Of a DNA stretch of 43,522 nt, positions 343 through 13,799 are shown piece by piece; position 1 is the stretch's first letter, and the number at the start of each line of letters is the position of its first letter. Location of the stretch: contig NC_069004.1 of assembly GCF_001194135.2 (NCBI RefSeq), positions 25,354,085-25,397,606 on the forward strand. Reading direction: 5' to 3'. The translations under genes and the position numbers were made by a program. A model generated the notes under the pieces. That model saw only the letters and a program-made list of their open reading frames with translations. It was not told the origin of the DNA and searched no databases. This stretch comes from Octopus bimaculoides. Taxonomy: Eukaryota.

Positions 343-468
343 CTGTACAGATATATTGAGGATGTAGTGCGTAGACCCAGTTGGCCACATTGTGTCATAG
401 TCAAGGACTTCTGTAAGGATGATTTCCCGCCCTCCAGCTGACAGAGAGAACTTTCCCCTTCCATCTAC
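343..468 (-). CDS. Cadherin gene coding exon 7 (VDGRGKFSLSAGGREIILTEVLDYDTMWPTGSTHYILNISVQ); gene continues left of the window
   Basis: Acceptor ttcttttacccatgtag, donor CAG|gtgagt; 126 nt, phase 0-0; F.L...I.L..LDY and Y.L.I.V cadherin pattern. Confidence 0.92.
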
Positions 469-599
469 CTACATGGGTAAAAGAAATCAATAAGTAAAAA
501 CAAAAAAAAAAACGAAATATGGCAAAAACATAGGAGGAAAGTTAGAGAGATATCAATGCGCCGGATAAAATGCAGAACTGAATTTTATCCGGGTTTTAT

Positions 600-1300
600 G
601 AATGTAGAAGTGAATGAAAGAGGGAATGAATTAGTAAAGGAAAAATAAGTGTGTATGAGGAATGGGTAAATGAATGAATGAATGAATAAAGTAATGAAAG
701 AGTTAGTTAAGGAATGAGTGATGGATAGAAGAATGAAGGAATCAATAAATTACTCAATGAATGAATCGATCAATCAATGAAGTGCCATTGAATGTATGAA
801 TGAATGAAAGAGAGAATGAGTAATAGTTGTTTGGTTCTATACATGAGTGAATGATTTAATGAATGAATGGGTGAATGAGTGAATGAATGAACGGATGGAT
901 GGGTTAAAGAATGAGTCAATGGATCAATTGATGAATGAGTAATGGGTACTTGAATGAAGGAATGAATAAACTAATTGGTGAATGGATCGATACAGGAGAG
1001 AAGGTTTCAACGACTGAATCAATCGATAGATCAATAATTGAATGAATGAACGAATGAGTGAATAAAAAAATAGATTATTATGAATGAATCTTTACACGAG
1101 GGGAAGACTTGATCAATTGATGGATGAATGAATGGATGGATGAATGAATGAATGAGTGAATAACTAAGTGGCTGGCTGTACCTATATATGAGAAAAGGAA
1201 TAAATTAATGAATGAACAGCTCAATGAATGAATCACCAGATTAATAGATGAATGAGTGATGAATAAATAAATGTACGATTGAATGAACGAATGAATAATT
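600..1300. repeat. Degenerate (GAAT)n/(GGAT)n tract
   Basis: Dense tgaatgaatg motifs throughout intron 6. Confidence 0.85.
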
Positions 1301-1393
1301 CTTTTCTCCTATTGCCGTAAGACCTGAAATATTGAGGTGAAGGAAGAAGGCAAATCGATTACATCGGCCATAGTAAAATGGATGAATTGATCG

Positions 1394-1576
1394 GTATTTC
1401 GTCTGCGGTTACGTTCTGATTTCAAATTCCGCCGAGGTCGACTTTGCCTTTCATCCTTTCGGGGTCGATAAATTAAGTACCAGTTATGCACTGGGGTCGA
1501 TGTAATCGACTTAATCCCTTTGTCTGTCCTTGTTTGTCCCCTCTGTGTTTAGCCCCTTGTAGGCAATAAAGAAAAA
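1394..1576 (+). mobile_element. SINE family B (tail type 1), 5'-truncated, 19-bp TSD
   Basis: ttcaaattccgccgaggtcgactttgcctttcatcctttcggggtcgataaattaagtacc core; TSD AAAATGGATGAATTGATCG at 1375-1393 and 1577-1595. Confidence 0.9.
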
Positions 1577-1718
1577 AAAATGGATGAATTGATCGATACG
1601 TGAGTGAAGGAATCGGTTAACGAATAAATGAATTGATCAATAGATGGATGAAGACACGAGTGATAAATGAAGGGGTGGGGAAGGAGTGTTCCAGTTGAAA
1701 ATAACGGACGTTACTTAC

Positions 1719-1826
1719 CTCGCTGTCGTTGTAAGGATGAAGACGAAACAACGCAATACTCCCAGTGATGTCATCATCTATAGCTTTATCGTTCAGAGTG
1801 AAAATGATGCTTCCTGGCATTGTTAA
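1719..1826 (-). CDS. Cadherin gene coding exon 6 (LTMPGSIIFTLNDKAIDDDITGSIALFRLHPYNDSE)
   Basis: Acceptor tactttcatttcag, donor GAG|gtaagt; 108 nt, phase 0-0; PGS.I and A.DxD cadherin motifs. Confidence 0.92.
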
Positions 1827-1865
1827 CTGAAATGAAAGTAACAACAACAATAATAATAATAGTTT

Positions 1866-2075
1866 AACATTATAGGCACAAGGCCTGTATGTTCGGGAGA
1901 GGGGTTACATTGACTACATCGACCCCCAGTATTTAACAGGTACTTATTTTATCGACACCGACAGGATGAAAGGCAAAGTCAACCTCAGCGGAATTTGAAC
2001 TCAGTGCGTAAAGACAGATGAAATGTCACTAAGCATTTTGTCCAGCCTGTTGATGATTCTGCCAGCTCACCGCCT
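1866..2075 (-). mobile_element. SINE family B (tail type 2)
   Basis: aggcacaaggcc...atcgaccccag...ggatgaaaggcaaagtcaacctcagcggaatttgaactcag...ctgccagctcaccgcct. Confidence 0.85.
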
Positions 2076-10560: not shown

Positions 10561-10724
10561 CTTGGAATCTTTCTGGTTTATTTCTTCTAAGTCAGGTGAC
10601 TGGATAAATCTGATCACATGATCTCCGCTTGCTGTTGTGTTCATTTCAAGATAGCCAAACGGTTCTTCTTCTTGAAACTCCCATTTTTCTTTTCTGTTAA
10701 ACGGTATTTTCAGAATAACTGTTC
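10561..10724 (-). CDS. Cadherin gene coding exon 3 (GTVILKIPF...IQSPDLEEINQKDSK)
   Basis: Acceptor ttcccattgacag, donor AAG|gtaggt; 164 nt, phase 1-0; PDLE is equivalent to the cadherin xDxE (LDRE/PDYE) motif. Confidence 0.9.
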
Positions 10725-11897
10725 CTGTCAATGGGAATTAAAAACACGAAAAGAAATTAATTCTTTTTTCCTAGAATTAGTTTCAAATTTTGGTATACGG
10801 CCAGCATTTTAATTGGTTTCTATTTTATTGACCCCGAAAGGATGAAAGACAAGGTCAAGCTCGGTAGAATTCGGACTCAAAAATTCTATTCGAATTATGT
10901 AATAGAAACAGCTCTATAATAAAAATGTTATCAATACAACGCGCCAGAAGCGTCAGTTTTCCTTCCGGGAAAAATCCCCCTTAAATAAGTATATATACTT
11001 ATATATATATATATATNNNNNNNNNNNNNNNNNNNNNNNNNNNNNNNNNNNNNNNNNNNNNNNNNNNNNNNNNNNNNNNNNNNNNNNNNNNNNNNNNNNN
11101 NNNNNNNNNNNNNNNNNNNNNNNNNNNNNNNNNNNNNNNNNNNNNNNNNNNNNNNNNNNNNNNNNNNNNNNNNNNNNNNNNNNNNNNNNNNNNNNNNNNN
11201 NNNNNNNNNNNNNNNNNNNNNNNNNNNNNNNNNNNNNNNNNNNNNNNNNNNNNNNNNNNNNNATAAGCACACACATACATAGATATGTGTGGGGGTAGTG
11301 CTTCATCTCATAGTACTAATATTTCATCATATTTTGAAGTCTTGAAAGGGTATTTATCAAGAAAACAACACTAAAGTAGAGTTTCGAAATGTGGAACTAT
11401 CTTTCTATAAGCCAGAATGTTAACGAAAACAATCATAAGATGATATATACGTATCGGAAGGTCACTGTTATATAAAATGAAACTGAGAGTCAAAACTATA
11501 ATAAGTTGTATCATATTTCTTGTCGATCAAAGCAGATCTGTGACTAAACTGCAATAACAACAACACCATTAACAGAGTCTTTCGGTTTTGAAGTATCTGA
11601 GCCAGATTTCCTATCTGGTGGTAAGCTTGTCACTTTAACCCAGCAGTCAGAGGGACGCTGTAACATGTCATGAACTTTGCGTTTTTTCTTATGATTAATA
11701 TATAAAATTTGACGACAATTGCAATGACGAAGAGAAAATAGAACCGGCAAAATGAGATGATCAATTCAATCTCACAAACATTCTCATAAATTTCTAGGAA
11801 AACAAACAAGAATTCTTTTGTATAACGTAAGTTTAGGAATTTTTCACTTAATTAAAAGCTGTAATGATTATTACAATGATGAGCTATGTAAACTTAC

Positions 11898-11954
11898 CTT
11901 CGTCTGTATCTTCTCTGAATGCCTTTATAGATGTATCAACAGTGCATGCGCCAT
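11898..11954 (-). CDS. Cadherin gene coding exon 2 (Y-GACTVDTSIKAFREDTDE-G)
   Basis: Acceptor ttcctttgtacttatctgtag, donor G|gtaagt; 57 nt, phase 1-1; joins exons 1 and 3 in frame, giving the cadherin E..GTVI motif. Confidence 0.9.
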
Positions 11955-12039
11955 CTACAGATAAGTACAAAGGAAAATATGCTTCGTGATATTGTTTTAA
12001 TTGATTTTCAATCAATAGAATGTATAACAGTATTGGAAA

Positions 12040-12620
12040 TCATTGATAGATGGGATGTGGACAGATGAGGCATGGGAAGTTAAACTGACGGTAGTTGAGC
12101 TGTGGTTAGATGAATCATTGAAACATGAGCTGTAGGTTGTTGAGTGGTCAAGCAAAAACGAATGAGCTGAAGGTAGTTGAGCGTTTATCAGCTGAGTCAT
12201 AGATAGATGAACTGTAGGTAAGTGAGCCTAGTTTAGATGAGCTCTATATAGATGAGCCATGAGTAGTTAATCTGAGGTTAGCTGAACCAAAGATAGATGA
12301 GTTATATATAGTTGAGCCTTGGTTAGCTGAACCATAGACAGATGAGCTGTCGATAGTTGTGCCGGAGTTAGGTGAACCATAGATAGATGAGCTGTAGATA
12401 GTTGAGACTTGGTTAGATGAGCCACAGGTAGATGAACTGTAGGTAGTTGAGAGGTGCTTTAATTAAACATGAATAGGTGAGATGTAGGTAGCTGAGAGGT
12501 TGTTAGATCAAGCACAGATGAGCTGTAGATAGCTACAGGATGAATGGCTGATCCATGGATAGTTTTTAGGATCATAAATAATTGAACTCTGGAGATTTGA
12601 GTTATGGAAAGTTATGTCAT
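12040..12620. repeat. Degenerate 15/30-bp minisatellite (GATGAGCTGTAGGTA / GTTGAGCCATAGATA)
   Basis: gatgagc/gttgagc/gctgaac recur every 15 bp or so. Confidence 0.8.
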
Positions 12621-13330
12621 TGCTAGATGAATTATCCACCGTGAGTTAACTAAATCATGAGTAATCAATTTCTTGGAGTATCGAACAGACATCAGAAAGT
12701 TAAGAGTTTATTAACCTGTCAATGCCGCAGTGACAACTGGTAATATAAATCAAACGTCATCATCTTCTTTATGTCCACTTTAAATGTTAGCATGGGTTAG
12801 AAAGGATGTTGGGGTTTGAGTCAGTTCTTACTTGACGTTACTATACACATAGACGGATCAAGGATCACAACTCGCTCATACGTCCCTTTAGCCTACCTTA
12901 TTCGGCTGCGTACTCCCACTTTTCGTTAACTATTTTACAGGCTCTACTGGTTGTATTGCATCATGACACCAGTATTAGAGCAGTTGTCATGTCCTTAGCA
13001 ATTATAAACAAGTTCTCTCTATCCTAGGTTGTCATTATTCATTTCCTAAGTAGTTGGCAAATGAGTTCATTTTAGAGTAGTATCAGCACTAGCGAGGTGG
13101 CGACGTTGTTTTGCCCTTTTCAAGCGCAAAGAGACCTCACAAATTTACAAATTTACGCTATTAAAGGCAACATGAAGATGAACAGGAGGGATTAATGAGA
13201 GAAAGAGAGAGAGAGAGAGATAGAGAAGGGTGAGCAAACGCATGCATATTCGTGACCTCATATCTATGACTACATATCTGAGTACATGGGTTCCAGGAAC
13301 TATACAAAGCAACAATAAAGAAACACTTAC

Positions 13331-13391
13331 ACACTGTATAGGAACCCAATCCAAACAACATTAATATCAGGATGCAAAGCGATCTTTCCAT
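13331..13391 (-). CDS. Cadherin-superfamily gene, coding exon 1 (signal peptide MERSLCILILMLFGLGSYTV)
   Basis: ATG at 13391; hydrophobic 20-aa leader; donor T|gtaagt at 13330 (phase 1). Upstream acceptor tttccattcttattcag|G at 13503/13502 and an in-frame TGA before the ATG imply a 5'UTR at 13392-13502 and a further upstream exon. Confidence 0.85.
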
Positions 13392-13799
13392 TCTGATGTT
13401 TTCTGATGTGTTTCTGGACGGTTGTAGAATTCACTTGATGAAGATTGGTAGTCAGTGTTGGTTGGTTATTAATCGGTTGATTGGCTGAAGGCTGGGAGGT
13501 TCCTGAATAAGAATGGAAATATACCACCATCAGTTCCACTAACACATACACAAACATGAATAAACACACACATTATATTCATATGTCATTATTCAGTTTC
13601 ATTTCAAGATTTCTTGCCAATAGAGAAAGAATCGCTTTCTAGCCTATATCCAAGGCTCCTTCATTGGAATTTCCAGAACATGAGCAGGGTTTGCATGTAT
13701 TTATGTATATTTAGAGTACTTAGCGTCAGTGCATATGCAGGTTTTTATGTTTTGTTTTATATATGTATTCTAAAGCATATATTTGCATGTCTATGTATG

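What the first reader, a model, noticed from the sequence alone, without database searches (positions are those of the whole stretch)
343..13502. Hidden seven-exon cadherin with a two-cysteine, CDHR5/PCDH15/Cad99C-like first domain
Seen: seven small exons with canonical splice sites and matching phases (1,1,0,0,0,0) splice to 221 aa: MERSLCILILMLFGLGSYTVYG-ACTVDTSIKAFREDTDEGTVIL...PDLEE...YTLNC...ADVNEKRPYF..SYVTDIDELTMPGSIIF..AIDDD..LDYD..YILNISVQ. Cys24 lies just after the predicted cleavage site and Cys107 in the strand after PDLE. Established: vertebrate PCDH15 (hair-cell tip links) and CDHR5 (intermicrovillar links), and fly Cad99C, are microvillus/stereocilia cadherins; PCDH15 and CDHR5 carry a cysteine pair at comparable EC1 positions. 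Inference from recalled patterns, not a computed alignment: this is a cephalopod member of that microvillar-link type rather than one of the expanded octopus protocadherins. It would be a candidate for rhabdomere, statocyst or sucker microvillus adhesion.
Basis: partly seen in the sequence, partly recalled or inferred. Interest (0 to 1): 0.7.

Follow-up and report, generated by a model that had tools for sequence, protein, structure and literature searches.

The report
First exons of a tip-link-type cadherin
Seven small exons on the minus strand really do encode the signal peptide and first two domains of a large adhesion protein whose tip carries the cysteine pair seen in the hearing and gut-brush-border cadherins, but it is an ordinary member of a known gene class and its exact family cannot be settled from this window.

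Summary
Seven minus-strand exons (13391-343) have AG/GT borders and phases 1,1,0,0,0,0,0. They splice to 663 nt = 221 aa with no stop. All six N-gaps lie inside introns, at least 293 nt from any exon. With a 39-sequence cadherin alignment AlphaFold gives pLDDT 88. Foldseek finds only tandem cadherin repeats.

Cys24 sits 11 residues before the XEX glutamate and Cys107 sits 4 before the F-G glycine. Both spacings match the solved CDHR5 C5-C73 disulfide. Cys107 shares an alignment column with the PCDH15 and CDHR5 cysteines. EC1 lacks the CDH23-type N-terminal calcium site.

EC1 shows no significant sequence similarity to any family. Pfam's PCDH15 EC1 model does not match it, and it also misses CDHR5.

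The intron plan matches Haliotis and amphioxus homologues position for position. Amphioxus CDH23 shares it too, so it marks the cadherin-related class only.

The nearest full-length relatives are about 3,300-3,550 aa, with 25-28 repeats. One is from Haliotis and one from amphioxus, both auto-named "Fat 4-like". They have a cysteine-pair tip, a PCDH15-type membrane-adjacent domain and a PDZ-binding C-terminus.

Expression, function and source species remain untested.

The parts
13331..13391 (-). Exon 1. It runs from the start codon (13391-13389) through MERSLCILILMLFGLGSYTV plus the first base of codon 21. It encodes the signal-peptide core and ends in a phase-1 donor GTAAGT.
   Evidence: Haliotis and amphioxus homologues have a phase-1 intron at the same place, just before the residue(s) preceding the first cysteine.
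11898..11954 (-). Exon 2 encodes (Y)GACTVDTSIKAFREDTDE(G). It holds the end of the signal peptide, Cys24 (codon 11946-11944), strand A and the XEX glutamate E35. It runs from phase 1 to phase 1 and ends inside the conserved Gly40 codon.
   Evidence: The Gly-codon phase-1 intron lies in alignment column 60-61 in all five genes compared.
10561..10724 (-). Exon 3 encodes EC1 strands B to E and the DRE-type motif PDLEE (D84, E86), followed by INQKDSK. It ends in phase 0.
   Evidence: D84 is invariant in the 43-sequence alignment.
8497..8559 (-). Exon 4 encodes EPVIESLKYTLNCTEDGMTHT. It holds EC1 strand F with Cys107 (codon 8523-8521) and the F-G turn.
   Evidence: The F-G hairpin intron after it is shared with Haliotis, amphioxus P0355 and amphioxus CDH23. 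It is absent from vertebrate PCDH15.
2839..2922 (-). Exon 5 encodes YKQSVAIADVNEKRPYFTMSSYVTDIDE. It holds EC1 strand G, the EC1-EC2 linker DVNEK (a variant of DXNDN) and the start of EC2.
   Evidence: Its 3' border (E|L, phase 0) is in column 198 in all five genes.
1719..1826 (-). Exon 6 encodes LTMPGSIIFTLNDKAIDDDITGSIALFRLHPYNDSE. It holds EC2 strands A' to C with a DXD calcium motif (DDD).
   Evidence: Compare PCDH15 LTPVGTTIFTG and Haliotis MTLPNTTVFTL.
343..468 (-). Exon 7 encodes VDGRGKFSLSAGGREIILTEVLDYDTMWPTGSTHYILNISVQ. It holds EC2 strands D to F and ends in the phase-0 donor GTGAGT. EC2 strand G and the rest of the gene lie beyond the window's left edge.
   Evidence: Its 3' border is in column 290 in all five genes.
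2923..8496 (-). Intron 4 (5.6 kb) holds four of the six assembly gaps and several interspersed repeats. No coding similarity was found in it.

Best explanation
The seven exons are the 5' coding end of a multi-exon, non-classical 'cadherin-related' (Cr-type) gene. It is read on the minus strand and continues past the left edge of the window.

The encoded part is:
- a cleavable signal peptide (residues 1-22);
- a complete first cadherin repeat, EC1 (about 23-125);
- a near-canonical calcium-binding linker (E35; D84-L-E86; D124-V-N-E-K; D-D-D in EC2);
- EC2 up to strand F.

EC1 is of the PCDH15/CDHR5 (Cr-3) tip type. Its N-terminal strand is most likely clamped to strand F by a Cys24-Cys107 disulfide. 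It has no CDH23-type extra calcium site.

The most likely identity is the counterpart of a long cadherin found in Haliotis (XP_067672062, 3,554 aa, 28 repeats) and amphioxus (XP_078576868, 3,277 aa). Those proteins combine three things:
- a cysteine-pair tip;
- a PCDH15-type membrane-adjacent domain;
- a C-terminal class I PDZ-binding motif.

By analogy, the protein would project from an apical membrane such as a microvillus or stereovillus. It would use its clamped EC1-EC2 tip for a calcium-dependent trans contact, probably with a CDH23-like partner.

Shown: the exons, the fold, the cysteine register, the calcium motifs and the shared intron plan.

Inferred: the disulfide itself, the length and C-terminal parts of the octopus-type protein, the partner and the cell type.
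For: Exon model.

Cadherin identity:
- phmmer against the PDB finds cadherins only, best 1.4e-11.
- AF2 with a 39-sequence alignment gives pLDDT 88.2 and pTM 0.74, with seven EC1 strands.
- Foldseek gives 269 cadherin hits at E<=1e-3, TMq up to 0.72.

Cysteine register:
- C24 to E35 is 11 residues, as is CDHR5 C5 to E16.
- C107 to G111 is 4 residues, as is CDHR5 C73 to G77.
- C107 shares its column with the F-strand cysteine of mouse PCDH15 (C99), of the CDHR5 orthologue shown and of amphioxus P0286. Haliotis C103 is placed there by motif position.
- The disulfide in CDHR5 and PCDH15 is documented in PMC8691648.
- The N-terminal ten residues of the model have mean pLDDT 91.

Not CDH23-type:
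- EC1 has no DXD motif and no NxxPxF extension.
- It scores 41.6 bits on the CDH23-like profile, against 141-199 for true members.

Relation to the long family:
- Both ours and Haliotis start with a 22-aa signal peptide and have the first cysteine at residue 24 (x-C in Haliotis, A-C in ours).
- Both use a DVNE linker.
- 'SEMTLPNTTVFTL' in Haliotis compares with 'DELTMPGSIIFTL' in ours.
- EC2 is 33% identical.
- A two-sequence Haliotis+amphioxus profile scores 49 bits. That beats the 8-sequence CDH23-like profile (41.6) and the 24-sequence internal-repeat profile (40.7).
- Exon sizes are 61/57/164/63/84/108/126 nt in ours and 67/60/152/51/93/99/108 nt in Haliotis, with identical phases.

Family features:
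- PF23206 PCDH15_12th scores 30.2 bits in amphioxus and 21.6 bits in Haliotis.
- The amphioxus N-terminus is the best non-vertebrate match to a vertebrate PCDH15 EC1-2 profile, at 67.8 bits.
- C-termini end in ..VTSL and ..STVL.
Against: - EC1 has no statistically significant sequence similarity to any family.
- Pfam PF18432 (PCDH15 EC1) and PF00028 do not reach threshold. The solved CDHR5 EC1-2 fails both in the same way.
- By BLASTP, the Haliotis N-terminal EC2 (44 bits) is not the top-scoring repeat among about 5,000 repeats compared (best 48 bits).
- The shared intron plan is also found in amphioxus CDH23, so it does not prove orthology with the long cysteine-pair family.
- In leave-family-out tests the cysteine-pair group is not cohesive: PCDH15, CDHR5, Haliotis and amphioxus each score higher on a generic repeat profile.
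- Everything 3' of EC2 strand F is outside the window.
- No RNA evidence was available.
Confidence: 0.55

Rival explanations
1. It is the true 11-repeat PCDH15/Cad99C orthologue of this animal. In that case the long Haliotis and amphioxus proteins are a separate paralogous family, or are over-extended gene models.
For: - It has the same cysteine-pair tip type.
- EC2 begins 'ELTxPGxxIFT', like PCDH15 'ELTPVGTTIFT'.
- Five of its six junctions match vertebrate PCDH15 in position and phase.
- The highest Foldseek TMq (0.72) is to PCDH15 EC1-2, though only by 0.01-0.02.
Against: - PF18432 gives no match.
- A PCDH15-only profile scores 26 bits overall and 0.1 bits on EC1.
- The N-terminus lacks the PCDH15 pre-cysteine helix and the RGGPP loop: C to E is 11 residues here against 16.
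- Ours keeps the F-G hairpin intron that vertebrate PCDH15 lacks.
- No invertebrate Cad99C sequence could be compared.
Confidence: 0.2
2. It is some other cadherin-related or Fat-like giant cadherin, and the two cysteines are a lineage-specific or unpaired feature without the Cr-3 meaning.
For: - EC1 cannot be placed by sequence.
- The gene plan is generic for the class.
- EC2 is about equally similar to many repeats of giant cadherins.
Against: - Both cysteines have the exact register of a solved A-F disulfide.
- Cys107 occupies an inward-facing position of strand F that is normally hydrophobic.
- The site-0 features of the CDH23/CDHR1/CDHR2 type are absent.
- The cysteine-pair profile beats the other two by about 14 bits.
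Confidence: 0.17
3. It is one of the expanded cephalopod protocadherins.
For: The best whole-sequence PDB matches are clustered protocadherins, and several top Foldseek hits are protocadherins.
Against: - Those PDB matches start only at residue ~100 and add up several repeats per target.
- EC1 alone matches none of them.
- The protocadherin N-terminal model PF08266 is not matched.
- No octopus protocadherin sequence was available for a direct test.
Confidence: 0.04
4. The exons are a non-expressed relic, or an assembly chimera of pieces joined across gaps.
For: - Six gaps of estimated length lie in the locus.
- No transcript evidence was obtainable.
- A search of a 5.8-billion protein set with the spliced sequence returned nothing.
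Against: - There is no stop or frameshift in 663 nt, and all splice sites are canonical.
- Exon order, strand, number and phases are as in homologues from two other phyla.
- The product folds confidently.
- The silence is uninformative, because that tool returned no target longer than about 1.8 times the query.
Confidence: 0.04

Closest known systems
CDHR5 (mucin-like protocadherin), EC1-2, PDB 6OAE
   Same: - The first cysteine lies within a few residues of the mature N-terminus and 11 residues before the XEX glutamate.
- The second cysteine lies in strand F, 4 residues before the F-G glycine.
- It has a PD[YL]EE motif.
- EC1 has no site-0 calcium motif.
- Neither EC1 is recognised by Pfam.
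- Foldseek TMq is 0.70.
   Different: - Sequence identity is only 21%, with no significant EC1 score.
- Ours has a ~10-residue insertion between PDLEE and strand F.
- CDHR5 is a four-repeat vertebrate protein with a mucin stalk.
- The relatives of ours that could be read in full have 25-28 repeats.
PCDH15 (protocadherin-15), EC1-2, PDB 4APX/6CV7
   Same: - It has an A-F cysteine pair, with the second cysteine in the same alignment column.
- EC2 starts NELTPVGTTIFT, against DELTMPGSIIFT in ours.
- Five shared intron positions have the same phases.
- It gives the highest Foldseek TMq (0.72).
   Different: - Ours lacks the 10-residue pre-cysteine segment and the RGGPP loop.
- PF18432 scores 195 bits on PCDH15 and nothing on ours.
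- Vertebrate PCDH15 has lost the F-G hairpin intron.
- Identity is 17-21%.
Haliotis asinina XP_067672062 and amphioxus XP_078576868 ('protocadherin Fat 4-like' by automatic naming)
   Same: - Haliotis, like ours, has a 22-aa signal peptide with the first cysteine at residue 24. In amphioxus the first cysteine is at residue 33.
- They have a cysteine-pair EC1 of nearly the same length as ours.
- Haliotis uses a DVNE linker.
- They give the highest identity in the alignment (26% and 24%).
- They give the best small-profile score (49 bits).
- The seven-exon plan is one-to-one with ours, with identical phases.
   Different: - EC1 identity is too low to score.
- Their 25-28 repeats, PCDH15-type membrane-adjacent domain and PDZ-binding end cannot be checked for our gene, because that part lies outside the window.
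- Orthology is therefore inferred, not shown.
CDH23 / CDHR2 / CDHR1 (Cr-type cadherins with an N-terminal calcium site 0)
   Same: - They have the same ancestral intron plan. Amphioxus CDH23 shares six positions including the F-G hairpin intron.
- They have the same tandem repeat fold and a similar EC2.
   Different: - They have an N-terminal NxxPxF extension, a DXD motif in EC1 and no cysteine pair. Ours has none of the first two and has the pair.
- Members score 141-199 bits on a CDH23-like profile, against 41.6 for ours.

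Membership tests
Cadherin superfamily | Tandem ~100-110-residue repeats with the seven-strand Greek-key fold | tested here: met
   - AF2 gives pLDDT 88.2, with seven strands in EC1.
- Foldseek gives 269 hits at E<=1e-3, and every one of the 50 listed is a cadherin repeat tandem.
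- phmmer against the PDB gives 1.4e-11.
Cadherin superfamily | Calcium-binding motifs XEX, D(R/Y)E, DXNDN and DXD in order | tested here: met
   E35, D84-L-E86, D124-V-N-E-K (a variant shared with Haliotis DVNE) and DDD in EC2. E35, D84, N126, P130 and F132 are invariant in 43 sequences.
Cadherin superfamily | Pfam PF00028 above its gathering score | tested here: not met
   The truncated EC2 scores 12.7 bits against a cut-off of 28.8, and EC1 does not match. As a control, solved CDHR5 EC1-2 also gives no Pfam hit, so this failure is not disqualifying.
Cr-3 tip type (PCDH15 / CDHR5 / Cad99C) | Cysteine pair joining strand A and strand F of EC1 | tested here: met
   - The positions and register are identical to CDHR5 C5 and C73.
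- C107 is in the same column as PCDH15 C99.
- C107 is in strand F by DSSP.
- The bond itself was not measurable, because no coordinates were returned.
Cr-3 tip type (PCDH15 / CDHR5 / Cad99C) | EC1 groups with family members in a computed comparison | tested here: inconclusive
   - EC1-only profile scores are 7.1 (cysteine-pair), 5.6 (CDH23-like) and 3.2 (internal) bits.
- hhalign gives E 0.13 for PCDH15 and 0.023 for CDHR5.
- Known members do not group with each other either.
Cr-3 tip type (PCDH15 / CDHR5 / Cad99C) | Match to Pfam PF18432 (PCDH15 N-terminal domain) | tested here: not met
   There is no hit at E<=10. PCDH15 scores 194.9 bits, and CDHR5 also gives no hit.
Cr-3 tip type (PCDH15 / CDHR5 / Cad99C) | Overall architecture: 11 repeats plus MAD12 (PCDH15, Cad99C) or 4 repeats plus a mucin stalk (CDHR5) | not testable with these tools
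   The gene leaves the window after EC2 strand F.
Cr-3 tip type (PCDH15 / CDHR5 / Cad99C) | Heterophilic tip-to-tip binding to a CDH23/CDHR2-type partner on apical protrusions | not testable with these tools
   This needs binding and localisation experiments.
Cadherin-related (Cr) gene class as a whole | Conserved intron positions and phases in EC1-EC2 | tested here: met
   Alignment columns of the introns, all with phases 1,0,0,0,0,0:

| Gene | Columns |
|---|---|
| Ours | 61/142/169/198/239/290 |
| Haliotis | 60/133/166/198/236/290 |
| Amphioxus P0286 | 61/133/167/198/242/290 |
| Amphioxus CDH23 | 61/132/167/198/234/290 |
| Mouse PCDH15 | 61/132/-/198/240/290 |
CDH23 / CDHR2 (Cr-2) tip type | N-terminal extension and a DXD motif forming calcium site 0, with no cysteine pair | tested here: not met
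   There is no extension and no DXD in EC1. The profile score is 41.6 bits, against 141-199 for members left out of their own profile.
Clustered / delta protocadherins (including the cephalopod expansion) | Protocadherin-type EC1 (Pfam PF08266) | tested here: not met
   There is no hit at E<=10. PDB protocadherin matches begin only at residue ~100. No cephalopod protocadherin was compared directly.
Long cysteine-pair cadherins (Haliotis XP_067672062, amphioxus XP_078576868) | ~3,300-3,550 aa, 25-28 repeats, a PCDH15-type membrane-adjacent domain and a class I PDZ-binding C-terminus | not testable with these tools
   These features are seen in the relatives. The corresponding part of our gene is outside the window.
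Long cysteine-pair cadherins (Haliotis XP_067672062, amphioxus XP_078576868) | N-terminal layout and EC2 closer to this family than to others | tested here: inconclusive
   - The layout and exon plan match.
- The two-sequence profile scores 49 bits against 41.6 and 40.7.
- But a single BLASTP ranking does not put Haliotis first.

The most novel reading that the evidence does not exclude
The window holds the cephalopod member of an unrecognised, widely conserved family of very long cadherins (25-28 repeats). The family combines three features:
- a PCDH15/CDHR5-type disulfide-clamped tip;
- a PCDH15-type membrane-adjacent domain;
- an Usher-like PDZ-binding tail.

It is present in molluscs, nemerteans and amphioxus, and is currently auto-named 'Fat 4-like' or 'cadherin-23-like'. 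Such a family could be the invertebrate partner of CDH23 in stereovillar or microvillar links. It would imply that the short vertebrate PCDH15 and CDHR5 derive from a long ancestor.
Probability: 0.3. Interest if true: 0.55.

Novelty: new member of a known kind. Interest (0 to 1): 0.33.

Why it matters
If the assignment holds, this gene gives a concrete candidate for the PCDH15-side partner of apical-protrusion links in a cephalopod. Those links could be in statocyst hair cells, rhabdomeric microvilli or gut brush border.

The comparison also suggests that the disulfide-clamped tip is older than the short vertebrate proteins that made it known. In invertebrates it sits on much longer cadherins.

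In itself the locus is the ordinary 5' end of a large adhesion gene. Its practical value is as a corrected N-terminal gene model (signal peptide and EC1), a part that small-exon genes often lose in automatic annotation.

Tried and rejected
1. Pfam on the whole 221 aa gave no family at all. Split into domains, it gave only a sub-threshold Cadherin hit.

2. The search for homologous proteins with the spliced protein gave nothing. This was later seen to be uninformative, because that tool returned no target longer than about 1.8 times the query.

Run instead with a vertebrate PCDH15 EC1-2 profile, its top 150 were swamped by giant cadherins whose many repeats add up. It was useful only because it happened to include the Haliotis and amphioxus proteins.

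4. Single-sequence AlphaFold gave pLDDT 41 and was useless.

5. I first read the sharing of five intron positions with vertebrate PCDH15 as family-specific evidence. The control with CDH23 and CDHR1 fragments and with the amphioxus CDH23 locus showed that the plan is common to the whole class. I withdrew that argument.

6. I first read the F-G hairpin intron as specific to ours and Haliotis. Amphioxus CDH23 has it too.

7. hhalign of EC1 against five family profiles gave nothing significant. The best hit was an out-of-register match to CDH23 strands D-F (E 3e-4), which I take as repeat-motif resemblance.

8. Foldseek ranking cannot separate cadherin families.

9. Attempts to identify the source genome through exact look-ups of three transposon ORFs failed. 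Rfam found nothing.

10. Literature searches found no description of invertebrate long PCDH15-like cadherins or of cephalopod PCDH15.

11. I had intended to argue that octopus protocadherins are single-exon genes. The literature calls them multi-exonic (PMC6339937), so I dropped that argument.

Full report
**1. What is in the sequence**

The window is 43,522 nt, 37% G+C, with 17 runs of N and many (TG)n/(TA)n tracts.

They are 13391-13331, 11954-11898, 10724-10561, 8559-8497, 2922-2839, 1826-1719 and 468-343.

- All acceptors end in AG after a pyrimidine-rich tract.
- All donors begin GT (GTAAGT three times, GTAGGT, GTAAGG, GTATGT, GTGAGT).
- Exon lengths are 61, 57, 164, 63, 84, 108 and 126 nt, giving junction phases 1,1,0,0,0,0.
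- The last exon also ends in phase 0 at a donor site.
- The ATG has a strong context (A at -3, G at +4). An in-frame stop lies 39 nt upstream.

**2. The assembly gaps**

None of the six N-runs touches an exon.

| Intron | Gaps |
|---|---|
| Intron 5 | one |
| Intron 4 | four |
| Intron 2 | one |

The closest gap is 293 nt from an exon, so reading-frame continuity across gaps is not an issue. The remaining risk is a small exon hidden in a gap. Three results argue against it.

- The homologous genes of Haliotis and amphioxus use exactly the same number of exons for the same stretch.
- The conserved cadherin motifs are all present, in order, in a 43-sequence alignment.
- The spliced product folds confidently.

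tblastn with the spliced protein, with the full Haliotis protein and with 354 collected cadherins found no further cadherin exon in the window.

**3. It is a cadherin**

- phmmer against all PDB sequences returns only cadherins, best 1.4e-11. The matches start at about residue 100, covering strand F-G of EC1, the linker and EC2.
- EC1 alone matches no solved cadherin at E<=10.
- Pfam gives nothing above threshold. EC2, which is cut before strand G, scores 12.7 bits on PF00028.
- As a control, the solved CDHR5 EC1-2 also gets no Pfam hit, while PCDH15 gets PF18432 at 195 bits.
- Single-sequence AlphaFold failed with pLDDT 41.
- With a 39-row alignment of EC1-EC2 tandems the model reached pLDDT 88.2 and pTM 0.74.
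- That model has seven strands in EC1. In precursor numbering they are A 31-34, B 42-46, C 52-58, D 65-69, E 75-79, F 100-109 and G 112-123.
- Foldseek against the PDB gives 269 hits at E<=1e-3, and every one of the 50 listed is a cadherin repeat tandem. TMq is 0.72 for PCDH15 EC1-2, 0.70 for CDHR5 and 0.70-0.71 for several protocadherins. The fold is confirmed, but the family is not resolved.

**4. The cysteine pair**

Gray et al. 2021 (PMC8691648) state that CDHR5 EC1 has a C5-C73 disulfide between strands A and F, like PCDH15. They state that this clamps the N-terminal strand, and that both belong to the Cr-3 subfamily.

I checked my recalled PCDH15 and CDHR5 sequences against PDB entries 6CV7/11IY and 6OAE. 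Both matched over the whole aligned length, apart from one residue at the construct's C-terminal end in CDHR5.

- In our protein Cys24 lies 11 residues before the XEX glutamate E35. CDHR5 C5 lies 11 before E16. PCDH15 C11 lies 16 before E27, because of an extra loop.
- Cys107 lies 4 residues before the F-G turn glycine, as does CDHR5 C73.
- In the 43-sequence alignment Cys107 shares its column with the F-strand cysteine of mouse PCDH15 (C99), of the CDHR5 orthologue shown and of amphioxus P0286. The alignment printed every second row, so the human CDHR5 and Haliotis rows were not displayed. Haliotis C103 is placed there by its position between the DAE motif and DVNE.
- DSSP places Cys107 in strand F.
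- The first ten residues of the mature chain have mean pLDDT 91, although they form no regular strand. That fits a pinned N-terminus.
- The coordinates were not returned, so the S-S distance itself is unmeasured.

EC1 has no DXD motif and no NxxPxF extension. These are the marks of the CDH23/CDHR2/CDHR1 tip with its extra calcium site.

**5. Attempts to place it by sequence**

- hhalign of EC1 against profiles of PCDH15, CDHR5, CDH23, CDHR1 and CDHR2 gave nothing significant. The short local alignments to PCDH15 and CDHR5 did align the cysteines.
- I then built three profiles from the same alignment, always leaving the query's own family out: cysteine-pair tips, CDH23-like tips, and internal repeat pairs of giant cadherins.
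- True CDH23-like proteins are recognised clearly (141-199 bits against 71-89).
- The cysteine-pair proteins do not recognise each other.
- Our protein scores 55.2, 41.6 and 40.7 bits respectively.
- The 14-bit advantage comes from EC2 and from the Haliotis and amphioxus rows. EC1 alone gives 7.1, 5.6 and 3.2 bits.

So sequence places the protein outside the CDH23-like group. It places it weakly with the Haliotis and amphioxus proteins. It says nothing decisive about EC1.

**6. Gene structure, with its control**

Fragmentary vertebrate PCDH15 products from genome-derived ORFs mark the exon borders. These are N31|G32 (phase 1), D85|P86, E137|L138, P177|T178 and N214|D215 (all phase 0). Five of our six junctions correspond.

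The control weakened this argument. CDH23 and CDHR1 fragments show the same borders.

I then obtained three genomic loci and solved their junctions exactly.

| Gene | Intron columns in the common alignment |
|---|---|
| Ours | 61, 142, 169, 198, 239, 290 |
| Haliotis | 60, 133, 166, 198, 236, 290 |
| Amphioxus long cadherin | 61, 133, 167, 198, 242, 290 |
| Amphioxus CDH23 | 61, 132, 167, 198, 234, 290 |
| Mouse PCDH15 | 61, 132, none, 198, 240, 290 |

Phases are 1,0,0,0,0,0 throughout.

A further phase-1 intron separates the signal peptide from the cysteine exon in ours, Haliotis and the amphioxus long cadherin.

The plan therefore identifies the gene as a member of the multi-exon cadherin-related class, and it validates the exon model. 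It does not distinguish PCDH15-like from CDH23-like genes.

Our post-DRE intron is displaced by 9-10 columns. Our protein has a ~10-residue insertion (about 88-98) between PDLEE and strand F. The model is least confident in EC1 there, at pLDDT 82-83.

**7. The nearest full-length relatives**

A profile search of 1.8 billion representatives was dominated by giant cadherins. It contained two proteins with an N-terminal cysteine-pair EC1.

- Haliotis asinina XP_067672062: 3,554 aa, 28 Cadherin matches.
- Amphioxus XP_078576868: 3,277 aa, 25 matches.

Both are auto-named 'protocadherin Fat 4-like'.

Both match Pfam PF23206, the PCDH15 membrane-adjacent domain. The amphioxus protein scores 30.2 bits, above the cut-off. 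Haliotis scores 21.6 bits, below it.

The amphioxus N-terminus is the best non-vertebrate match to a vertebrate PCDH15 EC1-2 profile. It scores 67.8 bits across both domains, against 52 for the next.

The Haliotis protein resembles ours in several ways.

- It has a 22-residue signal peptide and its first cysteine at residue 24.
- Cysteine to linker aspartate is 98 residues, against 100 in ours.
- It shares the unusual linker DVNE.
- EC2 opens 'SEMTLPNTTVFTL'.
- EC2 is 33% identical to ours.
- Its exon sizes are 67/60/152/51/93/99/108 nt, against our 61/57/164/63/84/108/126 nt.

The long family also includes a nemertean and a scallop protein. It ends in class I PDZ-binding motifs (..VTSL..STVL..ITHL), as PCDH15 does (..STSL..MTKL).

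Against this, Haliotis is not the top single BLASTP hit for our EC2 (44 against 48 bits). The shared exon plan is not specific.

**8. Conclusion and mechanism**

The locus is the 5' end of a cadherin-related gene with a Cr-3-type, probably disulfide-clamped tip. Most likely it is the counterpart of the long Haliotis and amphioxus family (confidence about 0.55).

Other possibilities:
- a true 11-repeat PCDH15/Cad99C orthologue (0.2);
- another giant cadherin with incidental cysteines (0.17);
- a protocadherin (0.04);
- an unexpressed relic or assembly chimera (0.04).

The working model follows established knowledge of PCDH15-CDH23 and CDHR5-CDHR2 links. A long, calcium-stiffened ectodomain would be anchored through a PDZ scaffold. 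Its clamped EC1-EC2 tip would make a trans contact between apical protrusions. Only the tip anatomy is shown here; the rest is inference.

**9. Limits**

- The source species was not verified.
- Whether the exons are annotated in public gene sets could not be checked.
- No transcript data were available.
- No Cad99C and no cephalopod protocadherin sequence was compared directly.

Noticed in passing
window 37628-40927: Remnants of a pogo/Tigger-type DNA transposon lie on the + strand. They comprise CENP-B_N (38651-38968, weak), HTH_Tnp_Tc5 (39488-39700) and DDE_1 (39793-40410, 107 bits).

A near-identical second copy of the HTH_Tnp_Tc5 segment lies on the opposite strand at 37628-37930. The two copies flank the N-gaps 38049-38391 and 39130-39476. 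This could be two elements or an inverted assembly duplication.
   Followed up: partly
window 1392-1580, 1873-2077, 9626-10140, 18911-19115, 27047-27190, 30260-30698, 31977-32143, 32988-33201, 35635-35951: A short interspersed repeat family (~110-210 bp, 70-95% identity) occurs in both orientations. It includes an inverted pair inside intron 3 (9626-10140). It fills much of the cadherin introns and the upstream 30 kb. Rfam gave no tRNA or SINE match.
   Followed up: partly
window 3212-3445, 3535-3710, 4158-4633, 6292-6547, 7900-8402, 25622-25909, 37931-38048, 38954-39129: A second interspersed repeat family (~170-500 bp) sits next to (TG)n tracts. Several assembly gaps abut its copies, so the gaps probably mark repeat or microsatellite collapses rather than missing unique sequence.
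   Followed up: no
window 12085-12532 (intron 1): A degenerate tandem repeat with a period of roughly 80-100 nt (67-69% self-identity) produces long stop-free minus-strand frames rich in S/T/H/L. It has no coding similarity.
   Followed up: no
window 111-291 and 41291-41472: A 180-nt segment 81% identical occurs at both ends of the window. A weaker third copy lies at 8759-8891.
   Followed up: no
L001 (Haliotis asinina CM074530.1, gene 2001-49701); L003 (amphioxus CM027647.1); proteins P0328, P0286, P0268, P0287: A family of very long cadherins was seen in a gastropod, a scallop, a nemertean and amphioxus.
- The gastropod and amphioxus members carry a PCDH15/CDHR5-like cysteine-pair EC1 and a PCDH15_12th (membrane-adjacent) domain.
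- The nemertean and scallop models lack a complete N-terminus.
- The EC2-EC3 linker in Haliotis is LDGDDLNPKF, against PCDH15 LDGDDLGPMF.
- C-termini are class I PDZ-binding motifs in the gastropod, amphioxus and nemertean. The scallop ends ..VTSF.

Public names are 'protocadherin Fat 4-like' or 'cadherin-23-like'. I found no paper describing it.
   Followed up: partly
spliced protein residues 27-59 (window exons 2-3): hhalign aligns DTSIKAFREDTDEGTVILKIPFNRKEKWEFQEE out of register with CDH23 strands D-F, EEASRFFAVEPDTGVVWLRQPLDRETKSEF (E 3e-4, probability 39%). The A-B region of this EC1 therefore mimics the usual 'TGxIxxxxxLDRE' motif. I take it as motif resemblance, but did not explain it.
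   Followed up: no
tool behaviour: the search for homologous proteins returned no target longer than about 1.8 times the query (654 aa for a 374-aa query, 395 aa for a 213-aa profile). Full-length giant cadherins are therefore invisible to short N-terminal queries, and an empty result with a gene fragment should not be read as 'unannotated'.
   Followed up: partly
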